Below, one piece after another: positions 10,301 through 61,016 of a DNA stretch of 64,000 nucleotides. A program made the position numbers and the translations under genes. Source of the stretch: Asterias rubens (taxonomy: Eukaryota); assembly GCF_902459465.1 (NCBI RefSeq), contig NC_047080.1, positions 5,270,001 to 5,334,000 on the forward strand. Reading direction: 5' to 3'. The first letter of the stretch is position 1, and each line of letters opens with the position of its first letter. Below the pieces are notes generated by a model. It was given only the letters and a program-made list of their open reading frames with translations, searched no databases and was not told the DNA's origin.

Positions 10301-13300
10301 TGAAACTTGAATACAAATTCAAAGGTTATGTTGAAATGATGCCATTTCTACCATTGGTAATCCCTAGGGTTATAAATTCCAAGGAGCTTTTGGAAACAGT
10401 ATCCAAAGCACTTGAGAAGTAGACCAATGAGCAGGGTTTCTTTGTTTGTGGAAAAAAGTATTGTCTGATTTTCTTCACCATGCCGACATAAAAAGTCTGA
10501 ATTCAGCCAAAAGTCTGAACAATCTCATCCCTGTAGTAACACCATGTGTGTATCTTACTTGCCAGGTAGAGTTTGTTCTTAGAGAACTGTCTTTCTTTAT
10601 TCCACTACCACAAAGTAGATTTATTGGATGTTCGGGAGACTTCTCAGTTCTAAAAAGAACTGTCCTGCTGTTTAACCACTACCTGGGCGGAAGGTGTAGA
10701 AAATTGGCTGGGACTACTACTTTAGCTTTTAGGATCGTGATTAACTGCACTACTGCGGAGTCAGTACTTGAATTGGTCGTGAAAAAGTTCTTGAAAAAAT
10801 CTAAGAAGCAACACTAACTAAATCAAGCTGCAAGGATTAGTAGCAGTTAGTCCGACTGTACACTAGGGTTGGAGTTACATGCATGCTACCTTATTTTTAC
10901 CTGAACAATAATAAAAGCGCGGTGATGAAATCATGAAAATGATTGTATCTCGTGATACCGGTGGAATCATCTATCCTGATTGTACCAAAAATCTGCGTAG
11001 CATGCAGAGTACCGATGAAAGGGGTTGGATATAGAAGCATGAGGGAAGGGTGAAATGGGGTAAAAAAAAGATGCAAAATGGAAAAGAAGAATAATTCATG
11101 AGATGGATATAAAGCAAAAGATGACAAAATGATCAGAAAGAAAATGGCTGCCATGAAGGATTGATTGACCTATTGCCATGGTTACCGAGGAGAAAAGGCT
11201 ATTTTAGATGCGACTGATGGAACTTTGCTGACGTGAGTCACAATGATGGGATAGTTAGAGAACTTGATCACTTAATACTTGATTCCTTATGTGGAAAAAA
11301 GTTGGAGAGAATTTTGAGAACTTTGATAGTTTTTATATTTGGTGATAATTTTGATAATTTTGAGAATTTACTTAGGAAATGTTAGATAATGATGTTTACT
11401 CTATCCCATGTTGTTTACATCACTCAATTTCAGGTTTTTGAATTTTACAAAGGGTTCGTGGGCATGAGGTTTTTTTTCCCTCCTTAGTAACCATAGCAAC
11501 AGATATATCCGGATCAATTCATGCATGACAAAGCGTGACGCTAAGTCAGTCTACCTGAACAGTAGTAGAAGTCCCATGAAGAAGTTGCTGAAGTTATTAT
11601 TACGATTAATGGCTTTGCCGTCGTCCGCTATGCTGATATTGCCGAAGATCTGAAACAAAATAAGTCAGTGACGACCCCCCCATGGGAACACAACAGGAAA
11701 GACAAAGTCACGGACCAGGTTCAGTTAGGTTTGTTAGTTAAAATAATACATGAAACAAATGGAAACATAACATACGCCTTTTACTTGTTGAATGACGACA
11801 TTTTGTTGTTGTTGTCACATAACTGAAAGCTTGATTTTCAAACGTTACCGTGACAAAAAAAGTTTATGGCCTGATGTTTTGACCCAAGTAGAGTCTTTCT
11901 CGAAGGCTAAATAACAACACAACATCATTCTTTTGGGTATGCTGCCAAAACATAGAATTTGAACTGCCTCTAGCTACCGGGCAACCTCGGTAGTCTAGTT
12001 GGTTAGACACTGCTCTAGAATTGAAAGGGTCGTGGGTTCGAATCCCACCTGAGTAACATGCCTGTGATATTTCTTCACAGGACTCAGGAAAGTACTGAGT
12101 ATACAGTTCTACATGTAACACACATCGGTGTATTGGTAAAAACCAAAATTAATGCTCCATCTTTGGTTTGTTTGTTTGTTTGTTTGTTTGTTTGTTTGTT
12201 TGTTTAAATGAGCTTCCCATCAAGGGAACTCGGCAACTCCCACAAAGGGATATAAACACCAAGTCTGTTTGATGTTAAAATCACTGTGCAAAGTGTCACT
12301 GCTCTAAAACTGATGAAGGAGCCCTATTTCATAGAGCTGCTTAAGCACAAGTAGCTAGGCATAAACAGAATTATGCTTACCAGAATTAGGTTACCAGCCA
12401 AACAACCATGTCACAAGTACAAATTGCGACTGGTATCCAGCTAGTTTCTGCTTAGCAGGAAACTGCTTAGCAATATTTTCTTTCCTAAGCAGCTTTATAA
12501 AATTGGGCCCAGGGAGCCCAAACCGGGGCTGGAGCCCAAACCGGGACGGGGAGCCCAAATTGGGCCCAAAGAGCCCAAGTTGGGCCCAAAGAGCCCAAGT
12601 TGGGCCCAAAGAGCCCAAGTTGGGCCCAAAGAGCCCAAGTTGGGTCCAAAGAGCCCAAACCGGGACCGGAGCCCAAGCCGAGGTTTAGGAAAGGTCCTTT
12701 GGATGTGATTGATAAAGAACCTACCTGCATGCCAATGATTGCATAGATGAAAAACAGCATGAATGTTAGAAGACAAACCCAAGGCAGCGACTGTAAAAGA
12801 ACAAAAACAATTTCAACATTTTACTTTTTACTGTTTACGCAACAACTAGTCCCTCTTATGGGAGTCAGGTTGGTGTAGTGGTTTCTTGCCGTGCCATGCA
12901 CCTCAATCCTACATGAGGCACTATGTGGATTGGGTTTTCAGTCCCTACCTGACTGCGTGGGTTTCCCTGGAATAATTCTCTGGGGGTTTTCCTCCCACAT
13001 CTTAAACTGAAATGTCTTCATTTTTTGTCTTCTCACCATGTCCATACGCTGAAAAGGCTTTGACAAGTATTAGTATAGATGTGGATGTAGATTTTGAGAG
13101 GCATTGTATGTACATGTAACTGTATGTTCAGTGTGCGGTCACACCATGTGTACATGTACATGTATATCTACTTTGCTGTGCAGATTTGTCCTTGATAACT
13201 CCTCTTCCTATTTGTTCTACTGTCGAGGAGTATGTTTCAGAATTCATCTGTTCTTTCAAATCATCACTCCTTTATAAGGAGTTCCGGACCACTCCCCTTT

Positions 13301-16300
13301 TCTCACCTTGAATGATTGTACGAATGTCCAGAGGAGGATTCGAATGGAGGACCCTTGACGGAGTAGTTTGATCAACCGAGCAGCACGGAACAACCTCAAG
13401 ACACTGAGATTAATGAAGCCATCCTGACCGAGGGGGAAAAAGTTTGAATATTCAAATATGCAAAATCAAATGATTTGAATATTCATAAGATATCCTTCAA
13501 CAATAGACCCTTCCCATGAACTATGTACATTGCACATAGCGCGTGCGCACTAACATTTTGGTTGGCAAAATGAGGGAAAATCGCGCTGTTTTGTACGTGG
13601 CTAATGGCTGTGTGACGCAGACGCGATTGCGCGTCTGCTTAGTGCACAACTCTATGGCGTTTGCCAACCAGTAGGGTCTGTACGAATGCGTAAATGTAAT
13701 AAGCATATTTCATGGGAAGGGTCCATTCAAATTGTTTCAAACTTCTTTAAAACTTCATGCAAATACAGTGTGAAATTTAGGATTTTTTTTTTTTTAAGGT
13801 TTGTTTCTTAAGCCTGGTTCATGCTTTATGAAAATTGAACAAACTAAACAAAATTCGCTTGGTCACATTGGAAACATATCTTGAACTTGGCTTTAAAGAA
13901 TGTTTTGATTGACTCCAGCAAATAAATCTCTTCTACAACAGATATTAAATTTGCATCGGGATAAAGAATATCTCTTCTAGTTCTTGCATATCAATTTGAT
14001 TAGTCTAATTCAATCAGTTTGTGCGTTTCAAAAGACTTTTTGTCCAAATCATTTAAGCAGTCAAAATATTAATGCTGTTTTTGGTTTTGTTTTTCATTCC
14101 GAGATACTGTGCAAATATAGTTCAACTCACAACAGGTTATAAAACAAAACAAAGTTTTATACAACCGTTTAAATCTGACGAGAAAACGTAAAAACAGGTT
14201 ACGGCTACTACAGAGTCTACCACCCTCAGCGACATGTAGCATAGCAAACAGCAGCAGAGGAAGTGGGGTCTGTCTAGGCCGTTGGCTTAAGGGTTGGCTT
14301 CGTGGTGAGAGAAGGAATGGATGGTTGGTCCCCCCTTGGGGAACAGAGTAGGGGGATTTCCGGTGGGGATTTCCAACAGAGGGTGAATGGATGGAATTGA
14401 CGCTATACTTACATCAGGCTACAAGAGGGAAAAATCAGAGACAAAAACAACAAATTATACGAGCATGCACCGGATTTGGGGGGGTTGTATATTAACACTG
14501 ATGGTTTAAAGTGTAATATAAGGGGGCCCTATAGGGGGAGGGGTTAGGCGGAGGAGGAAAAAGGGGTAATAAATCCCAGGGTTCCCTGACCACGATGACC
14601 TGCTGTAAGAATGACGGGACTGTATCAACATTCAACCAACGGAGGCAGGAAATGCAGAATTCGACATGACTTTTCTTTCTCAACAAAGAACAAGTATTTT
14701 TGATTTTTCAAGATATCCTTTTTACAGTGGTTTGATTTGGCTGAAGGTTCTGTCTTAAAGGCAGTGGACACTATTGGTAATTACTCAAACATTGGCCATC
14801 GGTTTAGCGTTTTCGCGTCTCGGTTGAGGCGCAGTGACAATCGCTGTTCGGACCAACCAGTGACCGATTTAAGGACTCGGTTGGGCTTTGGTTGGGGTTG
14901 TCAAAACGCAGCCCTTATGTAGGTGGTGCAAATAGTCTGGTTCCTTATATGCATTTGTGTTATACTCTTTACGTAAAACCCAGGGAAGCAGACTGAATTG
15001 GTCACAGCATGGTAAAGCTTAATGCACGCATGTCTACTTACTCCAAGTTTCACTGCAGTAAGACACTTATTAAGGGAATCCTACACAATTGAATTGAATT
15101 CTAATGCCAACTACTGCTTGCCAAACTTGTTAGAGGTTATTTACTTCACATAAGCACCATGTAAGTTAGTATTAATGTTAAGACACCTAAATACAGTTTG
15201 TTGCAATGTAATCTATAATCAAGTGTCCTCAACTCAAAATAATGAAAAAAAACAAAAGTAGCTATGTAATTATCCCATATTTCAGTATGACCATCATTTT
15301 AATAAAAACAAAGTATGCTCAACTGACAACTCTTAGGCAGCATTTTAGCAGATGAAGTTTTAAAGATATCGTTAAACCTTTTGTGTAATACTGGAACCGT
15401 TTTTCTTTCTTTTCAAAATATTGGGCTCAACTACAAAAATAAAGGCTACCGACTACATGTAAGTATTAAAACCTTGGAAGGGGAGGGGCTAGGGTGTTGG
15501 TAGGGGAGGGAGGGTGCTCAGTTATTTGAAGAATACTTACCCCGACTTGAGTTATAATAGCGTCGGCAATGCTTCCTAGCACAGTGATGAAGTCAAATGT
15601 GTTCCACGCTGCACGGAAGTAGTTCTATATGAAAGGTTTAGATTCAAGAAGTTAAAAAAACAAAAACTCTTGCCATACAGCAGGAAAATTTACAGAAAAG
15701 ACATTTGAGAAATGAAAGATAGATGGAAAAATGTGGTTTGAAGATGACCGCAAGAAACACTTGTTCACTTTATAAGTTACTTTTGACATTGAGAGTTGAA
15801 GAATATATTTTCTGAGAGAAGGTTTCCAACAAAAATGACCCAAAACAATGACATCTGTGCCAATGACTGATGAAAAATCATATTTTTCTTTTGCAAATAA
15901 TACTAAATTGGAGAGAGTTTTAGAAGAAAAAGAAGTAAAGAAAGAATAAAATGAAAACTAATCAAGAGATTATAGAAAAAGTTAAAGAAGAGGTTTTAGA
16001 AGAGGTATATCACTGTCTTAAAACTGCCTTGATCCTTTTGGGAACCACTGGAGTTTATGAAATAGCAATGGCTGTTATTTAGAGCAATTCCAAAGAAATA
16101 ATCGTTGTGCTTCAAAAAGTATTACCCCTAGTCAATCCCCTAATTATCCCATTTTCTTGAACCATCTCAGCTCCCTGACGAGTATACAGCCTGCGCTGCC
16201 AAATAAGTAGTATAACAATCTGAATCTATCACAAGGACCATATCTGCCCCTCGTGGGTGAAGAGAAGCAATTAGAGTCAAGTGTAGTGCTCATGGACACA

Positions 16301-19300
16301 AATAATTGTCATGACCAGGATTTGAACCCACACCCACCAACATAGCTTGTATACACCTGCAACCTAGGACCTCCTTGTCCCTCTTTTGCAACAGCTCCCG
16401 TTGGTTTTGTACACGTTTTCCAACTGTGGACCTTTCCCGAACCGTGGACCCTATTGCCCTCTTTTGTTATGGGTCCTCGGTTTGAATAAGTATACATGTA
16501 CCTACCCACCCAGAATTGAGTCTGACACACATTAATTGCTTTGCTCTAGAATGCATTACGATATGTGAGCAGACTATTTGATCTCATTGTCAAAACACGC
16601 ATTTGAAAAAAAACAAAAAAACTTTTATATGATTTTTTTCAACAACAAAAGACATTTGTGAATGATATCCCACTAGTAATCAGACAGATAGACAGTAATA
16701 ATCCCTGGATTGTAATTTACATAAAAACAGAAAAAGAAATGAGGAATGATTATAGAACGCATCATTGCAATCACAACAAAGTCAATGTTGAGCATTAGTC
16801 AAACAGATGCTGAATATTTTTAGTTCGTGCTTTCTCTAGTTATTTTTCTCCAGAAAGAGGACACAATTTCCTTTTTAACCATCTCTTCAAAAGATTTTCA
16901 AGAAAGTTTTCAAGAATACTTTCTCAGCGTCAGCAGTCTACTAATGTTATGATGTAAAAGTGATGTAAAAGAATTTGTTGTGACTTTATACATGTGTATA
17001 TTTAAAGACACTGGACACTATTGGTAATTGTCAAAGACCAGTCTTCTCACTTGGTGTATCTCAACATATGCATAAAATAACAAACATGTGAAAATCTGAG
17101 CTCAATTGGTCGTTGGAGTTGCGAGATAATAATGAAAGAAAAACCACCCTTGTTATACATAGTTGTGTGCTTTCAGATGCTTGATTTCGAGTCCTCAAAA
17201 TCTAATTCTGAGGTCTCGAAATAAAATTCGTGGAAAACTACGTTACTTCAGAGGGAGCCGTTTCTCACAATGATTTATACTATCAACAGCTCTCCATTAC
17301 CCGTTACCAAGTAAGGTTTTATGCTAATAATTATTTTGAGTAACTACCAATAGTGTGCACTGCCTTTAAACTGGATCAAAGATTCAAATTTGTCAGCTCA
17401 GCAATAATAAGGTTCTTAACTGCAATTTCATTATGAAAAATGTGTATACAATTGATAAATAACCCAAAATCCATATATAATTATAATAGTTTTTCTTGCT
17501 TTCATTAACCAAACAATTTCTTTTGAGATGACTCTTGATCAACAACCTAAATAAACCAGAAGCTCCAAAAAAAAGCAAAACCACTTTGATAAAATGCAAT
17601 AACAACCTGATAGTCCTGAGCCGACAAATTGAACAACAGAAAAAGTAAAGTTTGAATGAGAATTAAATTTTGACAAATAAAACAATGTAGACCATACACA
17701 CAGCTTGATTGGTCACAAACATCAAAATCATCAAAAACAATGCCATGAACCTGCACACAAAATGAATTGTTCAAATATTTAAATGAAGAGCATCTCATGC
17801 ATATGCAACGATTTTATGCAAAGTAGGCTTGTTCATGCATCATCAGCCATTGAGCATGGGTCATGAGATTGGACATTTTCAAACACAAAGGTAAAGGGCA
17901 AATTTAGGTGACAATGGGTACATTTTTAAAAATCCATTGCATATTCAAATAACGTCCCATGTTTTTTTAAAGAACTTTTGAACCAAGTATGAAGAATTCT
18001 GTAAAATGCACATTCAATTTTGCCACAAAATGTGGTTATTCACATACTATTAAAAACAGTGTTATCAGTTGAACTCTGTTAAAAAAATTGTTTAGTTGAT
18101 GGAAAAATTGTTTAGTTGTAATTTCAAAACACATTACACCAATCCGGATAGGCAGTATGCCCCGCCCATCAAGGTGGGTGGAGCATAAATGATTTAATTT
18201 TAGGCGCTTTTTATTGGTCAAGGAAGGTTGGAATTGGAAAGGTAACCTGCATTCTTAGCTAAAAAAATTAGTCCACAGTTTAGAGATTGGACTTCTTGAC
18301 AACTTTCACCTCACAAAGAATCAAGATTCTGAAAGGTTTCCTTGAAAATCTACAAAAGACATATATGTTTCAAACTACATTGTGTATTTGGAAATTTGAT
18401 AGTATTTTTCTTATTACTACAGCTACAGAAATTGAAGTAGATGTCAGCATACTGCTTGCATGAGAAATTCAAATGAGTGGGTGTGGTTGATTGACAGTAT
18501 AAACTGGGTGTGGTCTTTTGCCAAATCCGGATTGGTTCATTCTAAAAATAGGGGTTAAAAAACTGAATTGATATACATGTAGATCTGTTTGTACCTTTGG
18601 CCCATAAGCAATGAGCTTAAGAACAGCTTCAATAGTGAAGAGCACCGTAAAGGCGATGTTGAGGTAAGCTAGAACATTAACGTACTCATCAGATGCTTTA
18701 TATTGCTGGGTGATTCAAAAAATTGGGGGAGATGGAATCGGGGGGGGGGGGGGGGGGGGGGAAATGGTAGAGGAGGATAGAGGAGGTGTTTCAAAGAAGA
18801 GAAAAAAGAAAATAATACACATTTGGATGATAATGATTGACAACATGCATGGGAAACTGAAAAGAGTTCATGTGTTTCAATTCCAAATTTCTGTCTGATA
18901 AAGATGCTCATGTTGATTTTAAACTACTGATAAAAGTACAGCGGCAAAAGAGTTTGCGTTTCATACTTATTTGAATATATTTCAAAAGGTCTTTACTGTT
19001 CAGGAGATAAACAATTTGAAACTGAAAAACATCTTCTCTTTTGATTTTTCAAAAAACGAATGATAGCATGTATACGTCATGCTAAACAACAATGACAACA
19101 ACAACAACGATGACAACAACAACAACAATGCCAGAAACAACGACTGACAGAGGCACCAAAGGATATTATAGTAGACTTGTGGACAAGTCGATAAATGTCT
19201 GTCGCGGCAATAGCGTTCCCACTCTCTCTGCGATTCCCGCAACACTGGCGATTTTCTCGCAAGACTGCTGGCCCCTGCGAGCCTACTGCTCTTGTGCTGT

Positions 19301-55300: not shown

Positions 55301-58300
55301 TAGTGTCCAGTGCCTTTAAAACCATCAAAACAGAACAACCAAGTTTAAAAAAAAAGACCTATGTCAGGCCTGAGATTACACGGTGGGGACTGGCCTCTGA
55401 TCTTTCAATGGAAGCGCATTTTGCAAAACGAGAATTGCCTTGCCCAAAGAGGCCAATCCGGAGGCAACGTGTCCGTTAAATACCACAAGTTCCAAACTGG
55501 TACCCAGTCATGTGTACCAACCATGCACCTACTTCAGAGGGAGCCGTTTCTCACAATGTTTTTTACTATAAACAGCTTTCCATTGCTCATTACCAACTTA
55601 TTTTTTATGCTAACAATTTATTTGAGTAATTATCAATAGAATCCAGTGCCAATTTTAAAATCATAGAATTTCGAGAAATCCTATTTCCTGGATTTTCACC
55701 AACAATGTATCCTTGATGCACTATAAGAAAATCTAAAAGCAAAAATATTTAAGAAATACAACAATTTACGCTGAAATCTGTGCAAGACTTACCTGTGCTT
55801 TTGCCGTTTTCATCGGCAATAAAGCATGTATTGTGGAATTTACCCTGGAAGAATTCCATGCCAGTGATGGCAAAGATGATAATGACAAATAAAATGAGGA
55901 GACCAATTTGAAGGAGGGGAGCCATGGCTTTAAGGATAGCTTTAAGGACAACTTGCAAACCTGAAAAGAAAGAAGACAATTAATAATCACTGCCCAGAAG
56001 ATTCGTGTTTACATGATGAAAGTTTCAGGTTTGTTTTTATTAGAGCTTATTGATGAAACATTCTGTAGACACAAATAGTTGTTTACAGAACAAACAATAC
56101 TTTTAAAAAATGTTCTAACGTAAAAGTGAAAACCCATTTGTAAAAATGTCAAACCTTGAGCTTTGGATTGGTTCAGAATAGTTTTGAAAATGAAATGAAT
56201 TAAGTTTATACAATAAATATATTGCTATATAATTTCTGGTTGAAATCCCGCTTTAGTAGTGTCGTGTTTTGTTCACCCCCAAATATTTAAAGTTTACCCA
56301 GTGGGCCATAGATCCCCCTGTGGTTAATTACTTGAAAATAATCACATTTTAACACGGAATTATTACGTACAAAATTAGTGATTAAAGTTTTAACCATTGA
56401 GAACAAAAATAGTTAAAAGTGTTAATTATATAAATTTTCCTTTTTCCATTTATATACAAAACAATGTGCTTCTCCTGGTGCTTGCTTCATCACGTCGTTA
56501 TGGTTACTGCAAGTCACAACTTACTTGGGATGCCTGATACTAATTTCAGGGGTCGAAGTACTCTGATTGCACGAAGGGTTCGCAGATCTGGGGCCGAACT
56601 GCTTCCCTCTGTAGTCTCTGCTAGACCTCCTATGAATGATATAAATCTGCAGCGACACCAAGAGGAGTTGGGGAGGGGGGAGACAAAGGAGGGGGTGATT
56701 AGTTTGGAGGTCCATGGCTGGGAAACAGATTGTTATGTTACTTGTTTGTGTTGTTTGTTTTGAAACGTAAAACAAAAAGGAATTCATGCAAGATATCTGC
56801 ACTTGTCAACATTTAAAGTTAGTTTGTTTAGTCTGTACTTAATTTACCAAAATATGTAAATAGAGGTTTAAAAAGGTATTGTGTGTCATAGTTTTTTCTG
56901 TCAAAGTTTGATTGATTGATTGATTGGTACTTGTTAGTTGGTCTTCTGAAACTTCCATGGGGAAATTGACAAGTAGGTCAGGAATGTCAGCTGAATACAG
57001 AGTTTACTTATACTTAGCCTTTAGTCAAGGCGCATGCGGCACACCGGATAGCACGCACAGCCCCAAAAATGTAACGCACGAAAAAAGACTAACACTGCGA
57101 GCAGCGAAGCGCCTTTACCAACTCGTTTTGGGGGCCTTATGTTTTTCTTTACATTTGCCAACGATTTTGGTGGGAGAAAATGTAATGCATAATGCATTAG
57201 CGTGGTGAGTTGCTGGCCAATAAGAAGCCACAATTACTTGCATGACGTCACAAGAACGTTTGATGCAAATTCGTTACATTTTCTCCCACCAAAATCGTTG
57301 GCAAATGTAAAGAAAAACATAAGGCCCCCAAAACGAGTTGGTAAAGGCGCTTCGCGGCTCCGCCGCTCGCGGTGATAGTCTTTTTTCGTGCGTTACATTT
57401 TTGGGGTTGTGCGTGCCATCAGGTGTGCTGCGTGCGCCTTGACTAAAGGCTAACTTGTACTGGGAAAACAGCCCAAAACTGTTACAGTATTTTCACAAGA
57501 TAGACCAATCCATTCCTATTTAGCGTTTAGCGTTTTAGAAAAGCGGGTCAGCATCTCTGGCCGTAGCATTCACGAGCAGACACTGACCCCTGAATGAAAC
57601 CGAGAAAAGATTCATGCATGAATAGTTTCTCAGGTTCAAGTGTTCTTATGGATTTCTAATCAACAGCTGAGCATTTCAGACGAAATAGTTATTAAGGTAT
57701 AGCAATTAAAGCAATCGCACAACATTGGTAAACAGTATTGTCCAAAGGCCCACACTTCGTGTATCACAACTTACATAAAATAACAAAATCTGTGAAAATT
57801 TAGGCTCAATCGATCATCGGAGTTGGGAGAAAATAATGGGAAACCCACCCTTGTTTCCGCATGTTTCGCCGTGTCATGACATGTGTTTAAAATAAATCTG
57901 TTATTCTCAATTTCGAGAATTGATTTAATTGTTGTTTTCTAAAAAAATAAAGCATTATTTCAAGGGAAGTCTTCCACCATCACCTTCTGTAAACCCTGTA
58001 AGTTATTTGTAAATCTGTGAACTTTTAATTTTTGTTCTGTTCAGAAAATGTCCAATGGCTTTAAGGTGTTTTGGTAAAAAAAAATAATGATCACAAAGTT
58101 GATACATCGTTAAAACAATTTGACAGTTTTACACAAAAGTTATGATACCCGGTACAACATTTTAAGAATTTAACAGTTTTTGGTTTTACTAGTCGAAAAA
58201 CAACAATACAACTAAAGACGATAAACACACAATAAAGACACTAACTGACAACAACTTCAATGTACCTAAGAAACAGTGTCATAGTTGCTATAATTATAAC

Positions 58301-61016
58301 CCTCCATTCTCTCTGACTGTCGGGAGGATGGAGGGTTACAATTATCACAACTAGGTTAGATTTGTAAACACTGTTGTTGTATTAATTGAATGAGTACAGT
58401 TAGAATATCCATAATAATTTTCCATCAAAAAAAGACTTACTTGGGAAACCCGAGACTAACTTAAGAGGTCTTAAGACCCGAACTGCTCTAAAAGCAGGTT
58501 GATCAAAAGATGGTATGAGAATGCTCAAGGTACTGATCAATGATGAGATGAAATTACAAAGTGACGAAGCGTGAAGGCAGGGCAGGCAAAGAAAAGACGG
58601 GAAAAGCCACAGAGGGAAACGACATAAATTAGCAACAAGAAAAACCATGGTAGGGTAAAATGAAATAGCTCAGTATTTCTTGCTTTAAATTGATTGATTT
58701 TATCAGCCAATATCTTTGCATTATTGTCCTATTTTGAAACAAAGTCGTACAGTGACTCATCATCATTATTCATAACCTGCATATTTAATAAAATATTATT
58801 AGGCCTATTAATGTTATAATAAAATTTAAAAAAAATAAAAAATCTTCTCTGAACGAATGCATACATTTTAACCACTATGAAACACCTTGGTTGGGCTGTT
58901 AATGGCTCTTTTTTAACAAAAAGACTGGTGATGTAAAATTTTAACGCCACAGACATAAGGAAACACATGCAATAGTTTGGGACTCAGGCTTGTAACGTTA
59001 CTCCTAGTCCTAGATTCCCTAGAACCTTGACTCAGATGAGGTTCGTGCCGCTATCGCCTCCGGGATCAGACGATAGCGGAACTAACCTCATATCAAACTA
59101 AGAACATGGGGAGCACACGTAAGCTTTGATTCTTTTTAGTGAGGCAGTATCACAAAGTACAAAAGTGTATTTTTTTATTCCTCCAATGGTAGCTTTACTG
59201 CATTATTTGGAACATGTGTATATATTATTGCCTGTTTTACAACGTGGAAAAGTTTCCGTATGGCGCCACCACTTTTTCATTCGAAATAAAATAATATAGT
59301 ATCTAATTTACCTGATTGATATATCCCTTTTTGTAAAAATGAGTGAAAAAGTGGTGGCGCCATACGGAAAGTTATCCTACAACGTTAGTGTGGAAACAAT
59401 CAACCTACTATAACACTAAAGTCTAAACTAGTAAACCTAAACCTTACTACTGTCCTGCTTAAAAGGACAGTGAACACTGTCAATGATGTCATGTCAGTCA
59501 GTGTAACTGTAAAATTCAAAAGCCCATAAAAAAGGCATAAGCAACACTGAACATGCTGAAATTGTGAGATCCACCCATTTTAGGCTATTTCTACCTCCAT
59601 CCATGCACAAACTAGTTACCTTACCTAGTTACGATAACGTTGCGATAACCCTCCTGCCGACTAGTTGCGATATATAACGTAAACCTCCTGCCGACGGGGC
59701 GGAGCCTCCGGTTTCGCCGTCACCGGAGGCTCCGCCGTCGGCAGGAGGTTTACGTTATCGCAACTAAACCCTACCCTCAATTATATAGCTCACTAAGGAT
59801 AACTTTCCGTATGGCGCCACCACTTTTTCACTCATTTTTACAAAAAGGGATATATCAATCAGGTAAATTAGATACTATATTATTTTATTTCGAATGAAAA
59901 AGTGGTGGCGCCATACGGAAACTTTTCCCTCACTAAACCCAGTAACTGGGGCGATGTACTCCTTTTTTCGAAATTTTGACATTCTCATAATGTCAAAATT
60001 TCGAGAACAAAAAGGAGTACAGCGCCCAAGTTACTTGGTCTTTAGCTCACCAAACCTGATTTTGTAGAAATTGCATCCCAAACATCTTTGATCCTTCGTC
60101 AAGTTATATGCTCAGAAGAGAGTAATTTTGTGGCTTTTGCGTACATTATTCTTGTGGGAAAACTCACAGAATGACACTGTCGTTCCCCATGTAAACACAG
60201 TGCACTGTACACGTGAGTTTTGTGTACAAGTCGAGTTGGTCGTTAGAGGGTAAGAAATCGTGGGTCGAGTAGGTCATGAAGCTGATCGATCGAGACGATT
60301 AAGGCCGAGTTGGCAAATAAGCTCTACCACTTGTTGATGGGGGGAGAGGGGGAGGGGTCATTTATAAATATGATAGCAAACTCAACGAATCAAAACAAAA
60401 ACCGGACGAACCCAAAAACACAAACATGTGTTTCTTTTAAGTTGTCCTTTAAAAGAATTAATCGCACAATTACGAAAAATGTACATCACTGAGTCGACAT
60501 ACACTGTCACCCTGTTCAAAAATGGTTTGATCCGTTGGGCTTCGTGTGTTTTCATTAAAAGTTTTGTGCGGGTCAATAAACTTTGAAAAGGATTTTGTCA
60601 ATGTCGGCTCGCAAAACCCCAGTTAATTTCAAATAAGAAATCAAACTCAAAAACCCAAACCAAAGAAAGTTCGTACAATTACAAAGAGAGAAACAAAACA
60701 TACAAAAGGCCTAAGTTGTTAATAACAAAAGTAAGTCCCCTTTTATTGCACAGGATGAAGTGTTGCTATCTAAGAAAGTGCAGTCATTTTATGTAATTAA
60801 TTTCTTAAAGGTGCTACCACTACCTTCCTTGTTTTAGAACAAAAAGGTCAAAGGTCATAAATAATCAAAGACTTACCCTGTAACTACAACTACGAAGTCC
60901 ATTAAATTCCAGCCGTTTCTGAGATACGAGCCTTCATGTAGTACTAAACCTAATGCGGTTATTTTGATCGTCGCTTCGAGGCAGAAAATGGCGAGGAAGT
61001 AGATCTCTGTTTTTTC
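1276..61016 (-). CDS. Cav2: Multi-exon Cav2-type voltage-gated calcium channel alpha-1 subunit gene (partial; 5' and 3' ends outside window)
   Basis: About 40 GT-AG exons join in frame. Pore motifs are [22 protein letters not shown] and ATGESW (EEEE), and the AID is [32 protein letters not shown] and [12 protein letters not shown] are Cav2-type rather than Cav1-type. Confidence 0.97.
1801..1890. repeat. (TG)n plus poly-G / GGGGGTGA low-complexity tract
   Basis: Direct inspection. Confidence 0.95.
2760..2869 (-). CDS. Cav2: Cav2 exon 40 (IQ motif), 110 nt
   Basis: ctcag|AG TTG ATT...AGA ACG|gtaagc; [36 protein letters not shown]. Confidence 0.95.
3757..3830. repeat. Minisatellite, 22-bp unit TAATCTAGATTAGATAATCAGA x~3
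   Basis: Direct tandem copies. Confidence 0.88.
3848..4024. mobile_element. TTA-flanked MITE (PIF/Harbinger-like)
   Basis: TTA|AGGCCGAGTCACACTGCAGC...GCTGCAGTGTGACTCTGCCT|TTA. Confidence 0.78.
4070..4174 (-). CDS. Cav2: Cav2 exon 39 (pre-IQ), 105 nt
   Basis: ctcag|TG GCC GAT...GAC AGC G|gtagga; [34 protein letters not shown]. Confidence 0.95.
4621..4726 (-). CDS. Cav2: Cav2 exon 38 (pre-IQ), 106 nt
   Basis: gacag|CGT CTA...GGC AAA G|gtgaga; [35 protein letters not shown]. Confidence 0.96.
5136..5232 (-). CDS. Cav2: Cav2 exon 37 (EF-hand), 97 nt, single copy
   Basis: ttcag|T GGA CGA...TAC AAG|gtaaga; [32 protein letters not shown]. Confidence 0.96.
5731..5803 (-). mobile_element. tRNA-like SINE head (Asn-GTT-like); degenerate copy ~6840-6975
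   Basis: GGGCTACATAGCTCAGTTGGTAGAGC...GGTTCGAATCCC; acceptor stem does not pair; flanks shared with a second copy. Confidence 0.65.
6148..6524. mobile_element. About 380-bp non-autonomous DNA transposon (MITE), TTAA-flanked, Kolobok-like
   Basis: TIR AGGCACTGGACAC...GTGTCCAGTGCCT with TTAA on the left. Further copies at 17006-17365, 44753-45130, 45139-45496, 54937-55315 and 61284-61661 (mostly TTAA on both sides); partials near 8715-9070, 33977-34200 and 55525-55655. The superfamily call is inferred from the TTAA target and RR termini. Confidence 0.85.
6595..6722 (-). CDS. Cav2: Cav2 exon 36 (IVS6 end and EF-hand start), 128 nt
   Basis: tgtag|ATG TTG AAT...GGA AC|gtaagt; [42 protein letters not shown]. 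Confidence 0.96.
7300..7468 (-). CDS. Cav2: Cav2 exon 35 (domain IV filter and IVS6 start), 169 nt
   Basis: cacag|G TGT GCT ACC GGA GAG...TTC CTT|gtaagt; [14 protein letters not shown]...[20 protein letters not shown]. Confidence 0.96.
9350..9650 (-). mobile_element. tRNA-derived SINE
   Basis: Minus-strand head GGCATGGTTGGC...GGTTCGATTCCCGGCC followed by a CCGGTTTTCCTCCC SINE-core-like motif. Confidence 0.6.
10901..10992 (-). CDS. Cav2: Cav2 exon 34b (domain IV turret and P1 helix), 92 nt, divergent copy
   Basis: cgcag|ATT TTT GGT...TTC AG|gtaaaa; [30 protein letters not shown]; phase 0 to 2. Confidence 0.9.
11555..11649 (-). CDS. Cav2: Cav2 exon 34a (domain IV turret and P1 helix), 95 nt
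   Basis: ttcag|ATC TTC GGC...TTC AG|gtagac; [31 protein letters not shown]; phase 0 to 2. Confidence 0.93.
11945..12150 (+). mobile_element. tRNA-derived SINE family (copies also ~3441-3590, 24440-24850, 34555-34775, 54340-54545)
   Basis: A-box/B-box-like head (GGTAGTCTAGTTGG...GGTTCGAATCCC) followed by a shared body; five dispersed copies. Confidence 0.78.
12321..12510. mobile_element. GGGCCCAATTTCATAGAGCTGC-terminated MITE family (also ~20428-20630, 42960-43180, 48426-48592, 52205-52385)
   Basis: Shared termini and internal GCTAAGCA motifs in five dispersed copies. Confidence 0.7.
12551..12660. repeat. Minisatellite, 20-bp unit GGGCCCAAAGAGCCCAAGTT x~5
   Basis: Direct tandem copies. Confidence 0.92.
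12725..12790 (-). CDS. Cav2: Cav2 exon 33 (IVS5), 66 nt
   Basis: tacag|TCG CTG CCT...ATG CAG|gtaggt; [22 protein letters not shown]. Confidence 0.96.
13307..13423 (-). CDS. Cav2: Cav2 exon 32 (IVS4), 117 nt
   Basis: gtcag|GAT GGC TTC...TTC AAG|gtgaga; [39 protein letters not shown]. Confidence 0.96.
13502..13727. mobile_element. MITE-like element with terminal inverted repeats
   Basis: AATAGACCCTTCCCATGAA...TTCATGGGAAGGGTCCATT. Other unrelated TIR elements at ~19172-19460, 21390-21522, 21631-21801, 39950-40262 and 40781-41073. Confidence 0.75.
14413..14418 (-). CDS. Cav2: 6-nt microexon (Pro-Asp) in the IVS3-S4 linker
   Basis: ttgttgtttttgtctctgatttttccctcttgtag|CCTGAT|gtaagtat; phase 0 to 0; same position and size as vertebrate Cav2.1 NP and Cav2.2 ET microexons. 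Confidence 0.78.
15541..15624 (-). CDS. Cav2: Cav2 exon 31 (IVS3), 84 nt
   Basis: tatag|AAC TAC TTC...GTC GGG|gtaagt; [28 protein letters not shown]. Confidence 0.96.
17006..17365. mobile_element. TTAA MITE family copy (opposite orientation)
   Basis: Reverse-complement match to the 6148-6524 element; TTAA on both sides. Confidence 0.88.
18595..18705 (-). CDS. Cav2: Cav2 exon 30b (IVS1-S2 loop and IVS2), 111 nt
   Basis: cccag|CAA TAT AAA...CCA AAG|gtacaa; [37 protein letters not shown]. Confidence 0.92.
19572..19682 (-). CDS. Cav2: Cav2 exon 30a (IVS1-S2 loop and IVS2), 111 nt
   Basis: ctcag|ACA TAT AAG...CCA AGG|gtaaga; [37 protein letters not shown]. Confidence 0.93.
22422..22586 (-). CDS. 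Cav2: Cav2 exon 29 (III-IV linker and IVS1), 165 nt
   Basis: tgcag|AAA CAA TGT...ATG AAG|gtattt; [55 protein letters not shown]. Confidence 0.96.
22650..23200. mobile_element. GGACTAGTCC-rich palindromic MITE family (also ~40045-40195, 54223-54340)
   Basis: Repeated TTAGGACTAGTCCTA units and GGGGTGGATTT(C/T)ACAAAG-like termini. Confidence 0.7.
23289..23490 (-). CDS. Cav2: Cav2 exon 28 (IIIS6), 202 nt
   Basis: tgcag|C GTC CTA...AAT CAG|gtttgt; ...[43 protein letters not shown]. Confidence 0.96.
24004..24144 (-). CDS. Cav2: Cav2 exon 27 (domain III P-loop), 141 nt
   Basis: tacag|A GGT AAC...TGG CCA GA|gtaagt; ...[23 protein letters not shown]. Confidence 0.96.
24515..24779. mobile_element. 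TA-flanked MITE nested in a SINE (Tc1/mariner-like)
   Basis: TA|ACACCCGTTTCAGACAGGTGC...GCACCTGTCTGGAACGAGTGT|TA; the SINE sequence resumes on the other side. Confidence 0.78.
24868..25028 (-). CDS. Cav2: Cav2 exon 26 (IIIS5), 161 nt
   Basis: tgaag|GCG GTG TTC...GAA TGC AA|gtaagc; [53 protein letters not shown]. Confidence 0.96.
25758..25869 (-). CDS. Cav2: Cav2 exon (IIIS4), 112 nt
   Basis: ttcag|A GCC GGC...CTC AAA|gtaagt; [37 protein letters not shown]. Confidence 0.96.
26620..26795 (-). CDS. Cav2: Cav2 exon (IIIS2-S3), 176 nt
   Basis: tgtag|GTG TTG GAA...CAA GCA TC|gtaagt; [58 protein letters not shown]. Confidence 0.96.
27628..27766 (-). CDS. Cav2: Cav2 exon (IIIS1), 139 nt
   Basis: tacag|G ATT CGA...AAC GCG|gtaagt; [46 protein letters not shown]. 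Confidence 0.96.
28059..28275. repeat. About 95-bp-arm inverted repeat of a Penelope-like terminal fragment (related fragments ~9725-9870, 26350-26510, 42325-42420)
   Basis: 28059-28152 pairs with 28180-28275; contains the ACGTTTCGATCAG...CTGATCGTCTTC motif. Confidence 0.7.
28843..28918 (-). CDS. Cav2: Distal II-III linker exon D, 76 nt
   Basis: tgtag|AA GGA GAA...ACC AAC CC|gtaagt; [25 protein letters not shown] matches the conserved pre-IIIS1 motif. Confidence 0.94.
29711..29905 (-). CDS. Cav2: II-III linker exon C, Trp/Cys-rich, 195 nt if the GC donor is used (internal GT donor at 29802)
   Basis: 217-nt AG-free zone; accag|AC GTC CAA...GAA GAA G|gcaaga; open frame ending NNNEEE joins exon D ([10 protein letters not shown]) in phase 1. 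Confidence 0.62.
30935..30963 (-). CDS. Cav2: Candidate II-III linker microexon B, 29 nt (TPPPYPPLS)
   Basis: About 100-nt AG-free pyrimidine tract with CCTAAT/CTCAC branch-like sites; gtcag|A ACC CCA CCT CCG TAC CCA CCA TTG TCC T|gtacgt; phase 2 to 1. Confidence 0.55.
32169..32248 (-). CDS. Cav2: II-III linker exon A, 80 nt
   Basis: atacag|A GAG GGT...GAC CCA G|gtaggt; [26 protein letters not shown]; phase 2 to 1; about 90-nt AG-free zone upstream. Confidence 0.75.
32254..32332. repeat. (AATAATC)n heptamer array abutting the exon A acceptor
   Basis: About 11 tandem units. Confidence 0.92.
32696..32864 (-). CDS. Cav2: Cav2 exon 17/18 (IIS6 end and proximal II-III linker), 169 nt
   Basis: ttaag|AC ACC CTA...GAA GCA AT|gtaagt; [56 protein letters not shown]. 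Confidence 0.95.
32865..33709 (-). other. U12-type (minor spliceosome) GT-AG intron
   Basis: 5' splice site GTATCCTTT (33701-33709); branch site TTCCTTAAC (32884-32892) about 18 nt from the AG, with no real polypyrimidine tract. Confidence 0.92.
33275..33640 (-). mobile_element. tRNA-derived SINE with Deu-domain-like core (other copies ~26830-27450, interrupted, and ~53625-53905)
   Basis: tRNA-like head GTGTCGTGGCCGAG...GGTTCGAAATCCC; core GTAAAAGAACCCAGTGCACTTATCGAAAAGAGAAAGGGTTCGCCCCAGTGTTCCTGG resembles the DeuSINE domain as I recall it; (TTA)n tail in other copies. Confidence 0.72.
33710..33827 (-). CDS. Cav2: Cav2 exon 16 (domain II P-loop and IIS6 start), 118 nt
   Basis: ttcag|ATT CTG ACT GGT GAA GAT TGG...GGC AAC T|gtatcctttt; [39 protein letters not shown]. 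Confidence 0.96.
34804..34882 (-). CDS. Cav2: Cav2 exon 15 (domain II turret), 79 nt
   Basis: cccaag|C TTC AAC...TTT CAG|gtaaaa; [26 protein letters not shown]. Confidence 0.94.
35036..35350. repeat. Tandem repeat, ~105-bp unit x3
   Basis: GTATTGGTTGATTGATGACAAAAATAGTCTGGTTC recurs at ~35141 and ~35246, with a degenerate first copy. Confidence 0.9.
38384..38515 (-). CDS. Cav2: Cav2 exon 14b (IIS4-S5 linker and IIS5), 132 nt, canonical-type copy
   Basis: tccag|A TAT TGG...GGT GGA AG|gtaaat; [43 protein letters not shown]; phase 2 to 2. Confidence 0.94.
40321..40452 (-). CDS. Cav2: Cav2 exon 14a (IIS4-S5 linker and IIS5), 132 nt, divergent copy
   Basis: ctcag|A TAC TGG...GGG GGT TC|gtaagt; [43 protein letters not shown]; phase 2 to 2. 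Confidence 0.92.
42120..42229 (-). CDS. Cav2: Cav2 exon 13 (IIS3-S4), 110 nt
   Basis: tacag|GTT ATT...GTA ACA AG|gttagt; [36 protein letters not shown]. Confidence 0.95.
42701..42813 (-). CDS. Cav2: Cav2 exon 12 (IIS2), 113 nt
   Basis: cacag|CA CGT GCG...TGC TTG|gtgagt; [37 protein letters not shown]. Confidence 0.95.
43915..44103 (-). CDS. Cav2: Cav2 exon 11 (IIS1), 189 nt
   Basis: accag|AG AAA TCC...TTT CTT A|gtaagt; ...[47 protein letters not shown]. Confidence 0.93.
44753..45496. mobile_element. Two tandem copies of the TTAA MITE family
   Basis: Two consecutive ~370-bp units, each beginning AGGCAGTGGACAC. Confidence 0.88.
45853..46140. repeat. G-rich degenerate duplication (two ~150-170-bp units)
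   Basis: ATAATGG(A/G)TGGTGTGGGGGTTAGGATTAGGGGA occurs twice. Confidence 0.8.
49176..49274 (-). CDS. Cav2: Cav2 exon 10-equivalent (I-II linker), 99 nt
   Basis: Long U/C tract then cctag|CT CGT CGG...GAT ATA G|gtatgg; [33 protein letters not shown]; phase 1 to 1 fits both neighbours. Confidence 0.8.
53171..53343 (-). CDS. Cav2: Cav2 exon 8/9 (I-II linker with AID), 173 nt
   Basis: atacag|A GAG TTT...ATA GAA G|gtaagt; [46 protein letters not shown]. Confidence 0.96.
54043..54146 (-). CDS. Cav2: Cav2 exon 7 (IS6), 104 nt
   Basis: tttacag|TGT AGT...TTG AGT GG|gtaagt; [35 protein letters not shown]. Confidence 0.96.
54571..54767 (-). CDS. Cav2: Cav2 exon 6 (domain I turret and P-loop), 197 nt
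   Basis: atcag|GT GTA ATG...TAT TAT|gtaagt; ...[30 protein letters not shown]. Confidence 0.96.
54937..55315. mobile_element. TTAA MITE family copy
   Basis: TTAA|AGGCACTGGACAC...GTGTCCAGTGCCT|TTAA. Confidence 0.9.
55793..55960 (-). CDS. Cav2: Cav2 exon 5 (IS5), 168 nt
   Basis: ttcag|GT TTG CAA...AGC ACA G|gtaagt; [46 protein letters not shown]. Confidence 0.96.
56525..56646 (-). CDS. Cav2: Cav2 exon 4b (IS3-S4 linker and IS4), 122 nt, canonical-type copy
   Basis: ctgcag|A TTT ATA...ATC CCA A|gtaagt; [40 protein letters not shown]; phase 2 to 1. Confidence 0.94.
57014..57453. mobile_element. Long foldback MITE, ~170-bp inverted arms
   Basis: 57014-57184 is a near reverse complement of 57274-57453. 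Confidence 0.85.
57710..58060. mobile_element. Second TTAA-flanked MITE family (another copy at ~62265-62630)
   Basis: The two ~350-bp copies are closely similar; TTAA flanks; degenerate TIRs. Confidence 0.8.
58441..58532 (-). CDS. Cav2: Cav2 exon 4a (IS3-S4 linker and IS4), 92 nt, alternative copy
   Basis: gatcag|T ACC TTG...TTC CCA A|gtaagt; [30 protein letters not shown]; phase 2 to 1. Confidence 0.88.
59246..59928. repeat. Pair of identical 133-bp mini-MITEs in inverted orientation (59246-59378 and 59796-59928)
   Basis: Read base by base, the two are exact reverse complements; each has its own TIR (TTTCCGTATGGCGCCACCACTTTTTCA). Confidence 0.9.
60877..61016 (-). CDS. Cav2: Cav2 exon 3-equivalent (IS2-IS3), 140 nt
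   Basis: acag|GAA AAA ACA...GTT ACA GG|gtaagt; [47 protein letters not shown]. Confidence 0.96.

What the first reader, a model, noticed from the sequence alone, without database searches (positions are those of the whole stretch)
10901..58532. Cav2 gene with four tandem-duplicated, mutually exclusive exon pairs in core channel modules
Seen in sequence: exons 4a/4b (IS4 sensor), 14a/14b (IIS4-S5 linker and S5), 30a/30b (IVS1-S2 loop and S2) and 34a/34b (domain IV turret). Each pair is homologous, phase-matched, stop-free and has intact splice sites. Including both copies would duplicate a transmembrane or pore segment, so they should be mutually exclusive. That gives 16 core isoforms before counting the PD microexon and linker exons. 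Established: vertebrate Cav2 has a duplicated pair at exon 37, Drosophila cacophony at IS4 and in the I-II linker, Cav1.2 at IS6/IIIS2/IVS3, and molluscan Cav3 in a pore turret. Inference: a single invertebrate Cav2 gene may generate N-, P/Q- and R-like diversity by splicing instead of gene duplication. I do not know of the 14, 30 or 34 pairs being described in Cav2, but I could not search the literature.
Basis: partly seen in the sequence, partly recalled or inferred. Interest (0 to 1): 0.88.

Follow-up and report, generated by a model that had tools for sequence, protein, structure and literature searches.

The report
Sea-star calcium channel with four swappable exon pairs
This sea star's single nerve-type calcium channel gene carries four back-to-back duplicated exons that let it swap a voltage-sensor piece, a gate-coupling piece and two other core pieces; the layout is real and ancient, but it is a new example of a known trick rather than a new kind of thing.

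Summary
A Cav2 alpha-1 gene lies on the minus strand. Its exons are identical to an Asterias rubens RefSeq isoform. It holds exactly four tandem homologous exon pairs, at the stated coordinates. All eight copies are stop-free, phase-matched and have AG/GT sites.

The mutually exclusive reading is shown only for 30a/30b, because A. rubens RefSeq isoforms use one copy or the other. For 4a, 14a and 34b I found no transcript in this species. The RNA data available barely cover the gene.

Other evidence still supports those three copies:
- Orthologous copies are used alternatively in RefSeq isoforms of sea urchins, a brittle star, a sea cucumber, a feather star and an acorn worm.
- 14a has dN/dS of about 0.07 against Patiria.
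- 4a-type exons from three echinoderm classes share a proline in place of the outermost IS4 arginine.

Precedents exist. Drosophila cacophony has an IS4 pair, Aplysia CaV2 has a pair at the position of 30a/30b, and arthropod models have pairs at positions 30 and 34. Only the IIS4-S5/S5 pair (14) had no precedent that I could find, and I saw it only in echinoderms and a hemichordate.

The figure of 16 isoforms and the N/P/Q/R analogy are untested. The scan holds sibling notes on this same window, but no earlier report on other DNA.

The parts
58441..58532 (-). Exon 4a (92 nt): alternative IS3-S4 loop plus IS4. The loop is 10 residues shorter than in 4b, and a proline replaces the outermost gating arginine.
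   Evidence: AG/GT sites and length. Aligns to human Cav2.2 185-207. Forms a clade with the Lytechinus X7 and Antedon X5 exons at 96/88 support, all with Pro at R1. No transcript seen in this species.
56525..56646 (-). Exon 4b (122 nt): the canonical IS3-S4 loop plus IS4, with the [15 protein letters not shown] charge ladder.
   Evidence: 100% identical to A. rubens XP_033643023.1 residues 213-253. Bounds.
40321..40452 (-). Exon 14a (132 nt): alternative IIS4-S5 linker plus IIS5.
   Evidence: Bounds. The 14a-type exons form one side of a 100/98 split that includes the hemichordate Glandiceps. dN 0.068 and dS 1.05 against the Patiria exon. Used alone in isoforms of S. purpuratus X10, Lytechinus X3, Amphiura X3, Apostichopus X1, Diadema X2 and Glandiceps X7. 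In this species it was seen only inside an unspliced RNA contig.
38384..38515 (-). Exon 14b (132 nt): the canonical IIS4-S5 linker plus IIS5, nearly invariant across Bilateria.
   Evidence: RNA contig joint 42120 to 38515 with GT..AG ends on the gene strand. About 9 raw reads lie on it in run X16. Aligns to Cav2.2 590-634. Present in all 16 Asterias isoforms read.
38518..39067 (-). A 550-nt AG-free, pyrimidine-rich zone directly upstream of exon 14b. It probably marks a distant branch point and a regulated 3' splice site.
   Evidence: It is the longest AG-free stretch on the whole minus strand, at 552 nt against 293 nt for the next longest. Composition is 76% C+T and 7% G. The function is inferred.
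19572..19682 (-). Exon 30a (111 nt): IVS1-S2 loop plus IVS2, the major form.
   Evidence: Present in 13 of 16 Asterias RefSeq isoforms. Conserved in Patiria at 81% nt identity inside unalignable introns. dN 0.055 and dS 2.2.
18595..18705 (-). Exon 30b (111 nt): alternative IVS1-S2 loop plus IVS2.
   Evidence: Used in place of 30a in A. rubens isoforms X2 and X5 and A. amurensis X6. Patiria has an orthologue, used in its X2 isoform. dN 0.21 and dS 2.5. Aligns to Cav2.2 1493-1526.
11555..11649 (-). Exon 34a (95 nt): domain IV S5-P1 turret and the start of the P1 helix, the major form.
   Evidence: Present in all 16 Asterias isoforms read. Bounds.
10901..10992 (-). Exon 34b (92 nt): alternative domain IV turret and P1 start.
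   Evidence: Bounds. Aligns to Cav2.2 1620-1649. Groups with the alternative exons of S. purpuratus X2 and Lytechinus X2 at 91/76 support. No indexed RNA run held it.
60877..61016 (-). Exon 3 (IS2-S3), the constitutive exon upstream of pair 4. The 5' bound is approximate.
   Evidence: tblastn of P0157. Donor context.
55793..55960 (-). Exon 5 (IS4-S5 linker plus IS5), the constitutive exon downstream of pair 4.
42120..42229 (-). Exon 13 (IIS3-S4), the constitutive exon upstream of pair 14.
   Evidence: Joints to exon 14b and to the preceding exon were seen in run X5.
34804..34882 (-). Exon 15 (domain II turret), downstream of pair 14.
22422..22586 (-). Exon 29 (III-IV linker end plus IVS1), upstream of pair 30.
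15541..15624 (-). Exon 31 (IVS2-S3), downstream of pair 30.
12725..12790 (-). Exon 33 (IVS5), upstream of pair 34.
7300..7468 (-). Exon 35 (domain IV selectivity-filter TGESW motif and the S6 start), downstream of pair 34.

Best explanation
The window holds most of the single Cav2-type (P/Q/N/R-like) calcium channel alpha-1 gene of a sea star, very probably Asterias rubens, on the minus strand.

Four of its core exons were duplicated in tandem long ago, and both copies have been kept by selection. One copy of each pair goes into the mRNA. Each transcript therefore carries:
- one of two IS3-S4/IS4 voltage-sensor segments. 4b is canonical. 4a has a shorter loop and a proline at the outermost charge.
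- one of two IIS4-S5 linker/IIS5 segments. 14b is the pan-bilaterian form. 14a is a form seen only in echinoderms and a hemichordate.
- one of two IVS1-S2/IVS2 segments (30a or 30b).
- one of two domain IV turret/P1 segments (34a or 34b).

For pairs 4 and 34, exon lengths leave a remainder of 2 modulo 3. Taking both copies or neither shifts the frame, so only single-copy mRNAs encode a channel. This step is an inference from the lengths. For pairs 14 and 30, double inclusion stays in frame, so exclusivity must come from splice-site regulation. The 550-nt AG-free pyrimidine tract ahead of 14b is a likely regulatory element for that.

What is shown: the anatomy; the age and selection of the copies; either/or use of 30a/30b in this species; and either/or use of the orthologues of the other pairs in other species' RefSeq models.

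What is inferred: use of 4a, 14a and 34b in this species, and any difference in gating, coupling or permeation between isoforms.
For: Cav2 identity:
- The best solved-structure matches are human Cav2.1 and Cav2.2.
- The exons are 100% identical to A. rubens XP_033643023.1, named P/Q-type alpha-1A-like.
- The four filter motifs, the AID and the IQ motif are visible.

The pairs.

They are not artefacts, because synonymous divergence between a and b is saturated.

Either/or use:
- 30b is used in A. rubens X2 and X5 and A. amurensis X6, and 30a in the rest.
- The 4a type is used in Lytechinus X7 and Antedon X5.
- The 14a type is used in six species.
- The 34b type is used in S. purpuratus X2 and Lytechinus X2.

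Age:
- The 14a type forms a single split at 100/98 support that includes a hemichordate.
- The 4a type forms a clade across asteroid, echinoid and crinoid at 96/88.
- 34b groups with the echinoid alternative exons at 91/76.

Selection:
- dN/dS is about 0.07 for 14a and about 0.08 for 30b against Patiria.
- Only the exons align between Asterias and Patiria in the exon 29-31 interval.

The exon 13 to 14b splice junction appears in RNA contigs.
Against: - No transcript with 4a, 14a or 34b was seen for Asterias. They are absent from the 16 of 35 cluster members I could read.
- 14a appeared only in an unspliced contig.
- Raw reads gave 0 on 14a against about 9 on 14b in the one run that expressed the gene.
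- No indexed RNA run held 34b.
- Patiria has lost 4a, 14b and 34b, so the copies are dispensable in some lineages.
- RefSeq models in three species join 14a and 14b in tandem. This is either annotation error or real co-inclusion.
- RefSeq isoforms are automatic predictions, not cloned cDNAs.
Confidence: 0.78

Rival explanations
1. Only pair 30 is a working alternative pair in this species. On this reading 4a, 14a and/or 34b are recently silenced relics that still look intact.
For: None of the three appears in the Asterias isoforms read. There were no spliced reads or contigs for 14a and no RNA holder for 34b. Patiria shows that such copies can be lost.
Against: All three keep open frames, matching phases and good AG/GT sites. 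14a has dN/dS of about 0.07 against Patiria. 4a and 34b keep type-specific residues shared with species that use them. The RNA data barely covered the gene, so absence carries little weight.
Confidence: 0.14
2. The in-frame pairs, especially 14a/14b, are not strictly exclusive. Transcripts carrying both copies may be made as a regulated non-functional or dominant-negative product.
For: 14a and 14b are both 132 nt, and 30a and 30b are both 111 nt, so co-inclusion keeps the frame. Tandem 14a+14b appears in 12 of 15 S. purpuratus models, 7 of 8 Glandiceps models and the L. pictus model. Tandem position-30 exons appear in Rhodnius, Culex, spider and moth models.
Against: No Asterias isoform has both copies. 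No 14a-14b joint was seen. An extra S4-S5 linker plus S5 would invert the membrane topology of everything downstream (established channel architecture). Gene predictors often chain tandem homologous exons.
Confidence: 0.07
3. The pairs are assembly duplications or chance similarity.
For: None beyond the bare fact that the exons are duplicated.
Against: The copies differ at 9-12 of 37-43 residues, with saturated synonymous change. They lie 0.6-1.8 kb apart in unique intron sequence. Both copy types recur in other species. The E-values run from 1e-7 to 1e-21 within 64 kb.
Confidence: 0.01

Closest known systems
Drosophila cacophony (Cav2) exons IS4A/IS4B, with the I-IIA/I-IIB pair (PMC11828482, PMC12370356)
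   Same: It is a single invertebrate Cav2 gene. It has a tandem duplicated, mutually exclusive exon pair encoding IS4. In the fly the choice changes activation voltage and synaptic localisation.
   Different: The fly exons are equal in length and both keep the outermost arginine; they differ by one charge elsewhere. Sea-star 4a is 10 residues shorter with proline at R1. The insect alternative exon does not group with the echinoderm 4a type. The sea star has no I-II linker pair.
Aplysia CaV2 alpha-1 exons 33a/33b, also called DIVS2a/b (PMC10657410)
   Same: Two alternative exons encode the domain IV S1-S2 loop and S2, exactly the segment of 30a/30b. Their use is tissue-biased.
   Different: It is a mollusc gene. 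Sea-star 30a and 30b resemble each other more than any protostome exon, and among echinoderm isoforms I saw the pair only in asteroids. An independent, younger duplication is therefore the likely origin. That is an inference.
Tandem duplicated exon substitution events in voltage-gated calcium channel genes generally: CACNA1C/D (three each), CACNA1A/B/E exon 37a/37b, and cacophony (three) (PMC9741552)
   Same: The mechanism and the kind of target are the same, namely transmembrane and pore modules. The enrichment of such events in voltage-gated channels is already documented.
   Different: That survey covered human and D. melanogaster only. No pair at IIS4-S5/S5 of a Cav2 appears in the text I read. 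The sea star has no exon 37-type pair.
Vertebrate sodium channel exons 5a/5b (PMC12772994)
   Same: They are 92-nt mutually exclusive exons encoding IS3-S4 of a four-domain channel. Exon 4a here has the same length and encodes the same structural element. Co-inclusion or skipping shifts the frame.
   Different: It is a different gene family. The 5a and 5b exons differ by one or a few residues and not by loss of a gating charge.
Invertebrate Cav3 exon 12a/12b and NALCN exon 15a/15b (PMC9694082, PMC4436565)
   Same: These are mutually exclusive exons in a pore turret or filter. The NALCN pair is reported in echinoderms and hemichordates.
   Different: They are different genes, and the affected site is domain II. 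For those pairs the ion-selectivity effect has been demonstrated. Nothing is known about the effect of 34a/34b.

Membership tests
Cav2 (non-L-type high-voltage-activated) calcium channel alpha-1 | Four homologous six-segment domains, with an acidic filter residue in each P-loop (EEEE) | tested here: met
   Exons for domains I-IV map in order along the minus strand. The filter motifs TMEGW, TGEDW, TGEGW and TGESW are present.
Cav2 (non-L-type high-voltage-activated) calcium channel alpha-1 | Closer to Cav2 than to Cav1 or Cav3 | tested here: met
   Human Cav2.1 and Cav2.2 are the best solved-structure matches for exon 14b and exon 4a, and Cav2.2 and Cav2.3 are the best for exon 34b. The nearest full-length proteins are named type A or P/Q-type alpha-1.
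Cav2 (non-L-type high-voltage-activated) calcium channel alpha-1 | Beta-subunit binding AID in the I-II linker, and a C-terminal EF-hand and IQ motif | tested here: met
   The AID-like sequence lies at 53351-53166, the EF-hand exon at 5234-5136 and the IQ exon at 2870-2763.
Mutually exclusive tandem-duplicated exons | Adjacent homologous exons of matching phase with their own splice sites | tested here: met
   All four pairs meet this.
Mutually exclusive tandem-duplicated exons | Transcripts carry one copy or the other, never both or neither | tested here: inconclusive
   Met for pair 30 in RefSeq isoforms of this species. For pairs 4, 14 and 34 it is met only in other species' models. No transcripts of 4a, 14a or 34b were found here. 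Tandem 14a+14b models exist in three species.
Mutually exclusive tandem-duplicated exons | Both copies kept by selection across species | tested here: met
   Trees. dN/dS for 14a, 30a and 30b. For 4a and 34b the evidence is protein-level conservation only.
Orthologue of the Drosophila cacophony IS4A/IS4B pair | The alternative exon shares descent with the insect alternative exon | tested here: not met
   The echinoderm 4a type forms its own clade at 96/88, and the mosquito alternative exon falls elsewhere. The sequences are short, so a very old common origin is not excluded.
Orthologue of the Aplysia CaV2 33a/33b pair | The a and b types are shared between mollusc and sea star | tested here: inconclusive
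   Sea-star 30a and 30b are 67% identical to each other and do not resemble either of the two Haliotis or arthropod types more closely. No tree was built for this position.

The most novel reading that the evidence does not exclude
Exon 14a may be an undescribed alternative S4-S5 linker/S5 module of domain II that arose before echinoderms and hemichordates split. It has been kept for over half a billion years beside an almost invariant canonical exon, and it is able to replace that exon altogether, as in Patiria. Combined with an IS4 variant that swaps the outermost gating charge for a conserved proline, it would let one Cav2 gene make channels with clearly different voltage dependence or lipid/G-protein coupling. 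That would be a splicing route to the diversity vertebrates obtained from three genes.
Probability: 0.35. Interest if true: 0.62.

Novelty: new member of a known kind. Interest (0 to 1): 0.46.

Why it matters
Most invertebrates have one Cav2 gene for fast transmitter release, and how they diversify it is known mainly from flies and a sea slug. This gene shows that echinoderms, on our own side of the animal tree, do it with four swappable core modules.

Two of those modules invite direct experiments. One is a voltage sensor missing its first charge. The other is a second version of the domain II S4-S5 linker/S5, the region that in human Cav2.2 structures contacts the gate and bound lipid (my own knowledge, not tested here).

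The comparison across phyla also suggests that the same few exons (IS4, IVS2 and the domain IV turret) have been duplicated repeatedly in different lineages. That would mark them as the tunable parts of the channel.

Tried and rejected
RNA evidence in this species:
- Two run searches and two read-laying runs gave only the exon 13-14b junction and no coverage of 14a.
- The four raw-read runs hardly express the gene.

Genomic loci of other species:
- Eleven further look-ups failed or returned no DNA. The isoform was not on record in seven, or the gene exceeded 100 kb in Antedon, Apostichopus and Diadema.
- Only Patiria was obtained.

Searches for 14a-type exons outside echinoderms and hemichordates:
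- A region-restricted protein search found only S. purpuratus and Glandiceps.
- 120 short calcium-channel fragments held none, and 97 of them carry the 14b-type motif.

A second listing of the Asterias cluster returned the same 15 members. About 19 isoforms therefore remain unread.

Explanations for exclusivity:
- Steric hindrance was considered and rejected. The a-b introns are 0.56-1.8 kb, and the AG-free tract of 14b begins about 1.25 kb from the 14a donor.
- A scan for inverted repeats gave only weak or transposon-like pairs and no cross-species support. No claim is made about competing RNA structures.

34a has an NIS sequon and 34b has none. In S. purpuratus the alternative exon carries the sequon instead. 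It is therefore not a conserved difference.
Full report
**What is there**

The window has no gaps and is 37% G+C. Its minus strand carries a long calcium-channel gene. The stop-free segments read as IS4, IS5, the domain I pore and so on, in descending coordinates.

A profile-free search with the domain I pore exon returned full-length Cav2 proteins. A follow-up search named them: "voltage-dependent calcium channel type A / P/Q-type alpha-1" of crinoids, brittle stars, sea urchins, sea cucumbers, sea stars and acorn worms.

The Asterias rubens isoform X11 (XP_033643023.1, P0157) matches the window's exons at 100%. The window is therefore A. rubens or something almost identical to it.

The gene is larger than the finding's span. 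Exon 3 lies near 61016-60877, and the EF-hand and IQ exons run down to about 2760.

**The observation**

An all-against-all comparison of minus-strand stop-free segments found four tandem pairs:

| Pair | Identity | E-value |
|---|---|---|
| IS4 (4a/4b) | 52% over 40 aa | 1e-7 |
| IIS4-S5/S5 (14a/14b) | 80% over 44 aa | 3e-21 |
| IVS1-S2/S2 (30a/30b) | 67% over 40 aa | 8e-16 |
| Domain IV turret (34a/34b) | 58% over 33 aa | 4e-7 |

Searching every exon against its 6-kb neighbourhood found these four pairs and nothing else. In particular there is no I-II linker pair and no exon 37-type pair.

All eight exons have AG acceptors and GT donors, and each pair is matched in phase. Lengths are 92/122, 132/132, 111/111 and 95/92 nt.

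The outer bounds equal the finding's coordinates. Alignment to human Cav2.2 confirms the segment names.

**Are the second copies real exons?**

Between copies within the window, synonymous divergence is saturated. These are therefore old duplicates and not assembly errors.

I read 90-odd RefSeq isoforms of ten echinoderm and hemichordate species and cut out the four positions.

*Pair 30.* A. rubens X2 and X5 and A. amurensis X6 carry 30b, and the other Asterias isoforms carry 30a. Patiria X2 carries its 30b orthologue.

*Pair 14.* A 14a-type exon is used alone in S. purpuratus X10, Lytechinus X3, Amphiura X3, Apostichopus X1, Diadema X2 and Glandiceps X7. It is the only exon 14 in Patiria.

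*Pair 4.* A 4a-type exon is used in Lytechinus X7 and Antedon X5.

*Pair 34.* A 34b-type exon is used in S. purpuratus X2 and Lytechinus X2. Antedon has two variants at that position and Amphiura has three.

Trees support single old origins:
- The 14a type is one side of a 100/98 split against every 14b-type exon, including vertebrate and protostome ones.
- The 4a type is a 96/88 clade spanning asteroid, echinoid and crinoid.
- 34b groups with the echinoid alternative exons at 91/76.

Against the Patiria locus, only exons align. The substitution rates are:

| Exon | dN | dS |
|---|---|---|
| 14a | 0.068 | 1.05 |
| 30a | 0.055 | 2.2 |
| 30b | 0.21 | 2.5 |

These values indicate strong purifying selection.

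Patiria itself has only 4b, a 14a-type exon, 30a plus 30b, and 34a. Copies are therefore lost in some lineages. The 14a type can evidently serve as the sole exon.

**What I could not show**

None of the 16 Asterias isoforms I could read uses 4a, 14a or 34b. About 19 cluster members stayed unlisted.

RNA contigs of four runs gave a clean exon 13 to 14b junction (42120 to 38515, with GT..AG ends on the gene strand). For 14a they gave only an unspliced contig.

Four raw-read RNA runs barely express the gene. One run had about 9 reads on 14b and none on 14a.

No indexed RNA run held 34b.

Use of these three exons in this species therefore rests on intact structure, selection and use of the orthologues elsewhere.

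**How it probably works**

For pairs 4 and 34, the exon length leaves a remainder of 2 modulo 3. Including both copies or neither shifts the frame, so only single-copy mRNAs encode a channel. This is the same logic as the 92-nt sodium channel exons 5a/5b (PMC12772994).

For pairs 14 and 30, co-inclusion stays in frame, so the choice must be made at the splice sites. Ahead of 14b lies a 550-nt AG-free tract with 76% pyrimidine. It is the longest AG-free stretch on the strand, at 552 nt against 293 nt for the next. This is the hallmark of a distant branch point and a repressible 3' splice site. That reading is an inference.

The tract starts about 1.25 kb from the 14a donor, so steric hindrance is excluded. 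Inverted repeats gave nothing convincing.

Many RefSeq models of S. purpuratus, L. pictus and Glandiceps chain 14a and 14b together. An extra S4-S5 linker plus S5 would invert the downstream topology. I therefore read these models as prediction artefacts, but this is untested.

**Likely consequences (all inferred)**

*4a.* It shortens the IS3-S4 loop by ten residues. It puts a proline where the outermost IS4 arginine sits, and this feature is shared by all three 4a-type exons. In Drosophila, IS4 exon choice shifts activation voltage and synaptic targeting (PMC11828482).

*14a.* It changes about nine residues in the IIS4-S5 linker and IIS5.

*30a/30b.* They differ mainly in the extracellular S1-S2 loop and at the end of S2.

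*34a/34b.* They differ just before and within the P1 helix, next to the domain IV filter glutamate. The glycosylation difference between 34a and 34b is not conserved in sea urchins.

**Comparison with what is known**

Tandem duplicated, mutually exclusive exons are a documented speciality of voltage-gated channels. One survey counts three events in cacophony, three each in CACNA1C and CACNA1D, and one each in CACNA1A, CACNA1B and CACNA1E (PMC9741552).

The IS4 site is known from flies (PMC11828482, PMC12370356). The domain IV S1-S2/S2 site is published for Aplysia CaV2 as exons 33a/33b (PMC10657410).

My reading of protostome RefSeq isoforms shows alternative exons at these positions:
- Position 4 in Haliotis, Lineus and insects.
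- Position 30 in Haliotis, Penaeus, Centruroides and insects.
- Position 34 in Penaeus, Centruroides and insects, including Drosophila virilis.
- Position 14 in none of them.

The echinoderm 4a type does not group with the insect alternative exon. The asteroid 30a and 30b resemble each other most. Repeated independent duplication of the same exons is therefore the simplest reading.

I found no paper on echinoderm Cav2 splicing. The isoforms exist only as automatic RefSeq predictions.

**Verdict**

The four pairs are real, old, selected alternative exons. Exclusivity is shown for one pair in this species and is likely for the others. The 16-isoform count and the analogy with N/P/Q/R channels are untested.

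It is a new member of a known kind. The echinoderm-hemichordate IIS4-S5/S5 pair and the charge-less IS4 variant are the parts worth an experiment.

Noticed in passing
window 14413-14418 (minus strand): There is a six-base microexon (AG|CCTGAT|GT, encoding Pro-Asp) in the IVS3-S4 loop. A. rubens isoforms X2, X3 and X11 include it and X5 skips it. It sits where vertebrate Cav2.1 and Cav2.2 have their NP/ET microexon.
   Followed up: partly
window 29712-29909 (minus strand): The Trp/Cys-rich II-III linker exon is 100% identical to the A. rubens protein. It ends in a GC donor (G|GCAAGA) and not GT.
   Followed up: partly
L001 (Patiria miniata Cav2 locus) 17217-20909, 32889-33385, 51461-52135: Patiria has lost three of the eight exons. 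It has no 4a and no 34b. It also lacks the otherwise near-invariant 14b, so its only exon 14 is of the 14a type.
   Followed up: partly
RefSeq isoforms P0156, P0161, P0311 (position 14); P0193, P0248, P0183, P0214 (position 30): Many automatic gene models chain both copies of a tandem exon pair into one protein. Position 14 is chained in S. purpuratus, Glandiceps and L. pictus. Position 30 is chained in Rhodnius, Culex, a spider and a moth. These are probably annotation errors that would give an impossible membrane topology.
   Followed up: no
Protostome Cav2 isoforms P0191-P0490: Alternative exon pairs recur at the same three exons (IS4, IVS1-S2/S2 and the domain IV turret) in molluscs, a nemertean, crustaceans, chelicerates and insects. 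Drosophila virilis X12 and X13 differ at the turret exon. These exons look like hot spots for repeated duplication.
   Followed up: partly
window 40000-40250, 40780-41100, 42500-43500: Intronic repeats are covered hundreds to tens of thousands of times in RNA runs. The reads run on into unrelated sequence and show strand-switch joints. These are transcribed transposon families, one of them with 36-nt terminal inverted repeats at 40780-40815 and 41039-41074.
   Followed up: no
window 38494: All nine RNA reads of run X16 read A where the window has G, inside exon 14b. This is probably an allele or strain difference in the sampled animals and not editing.
   Followed up: no
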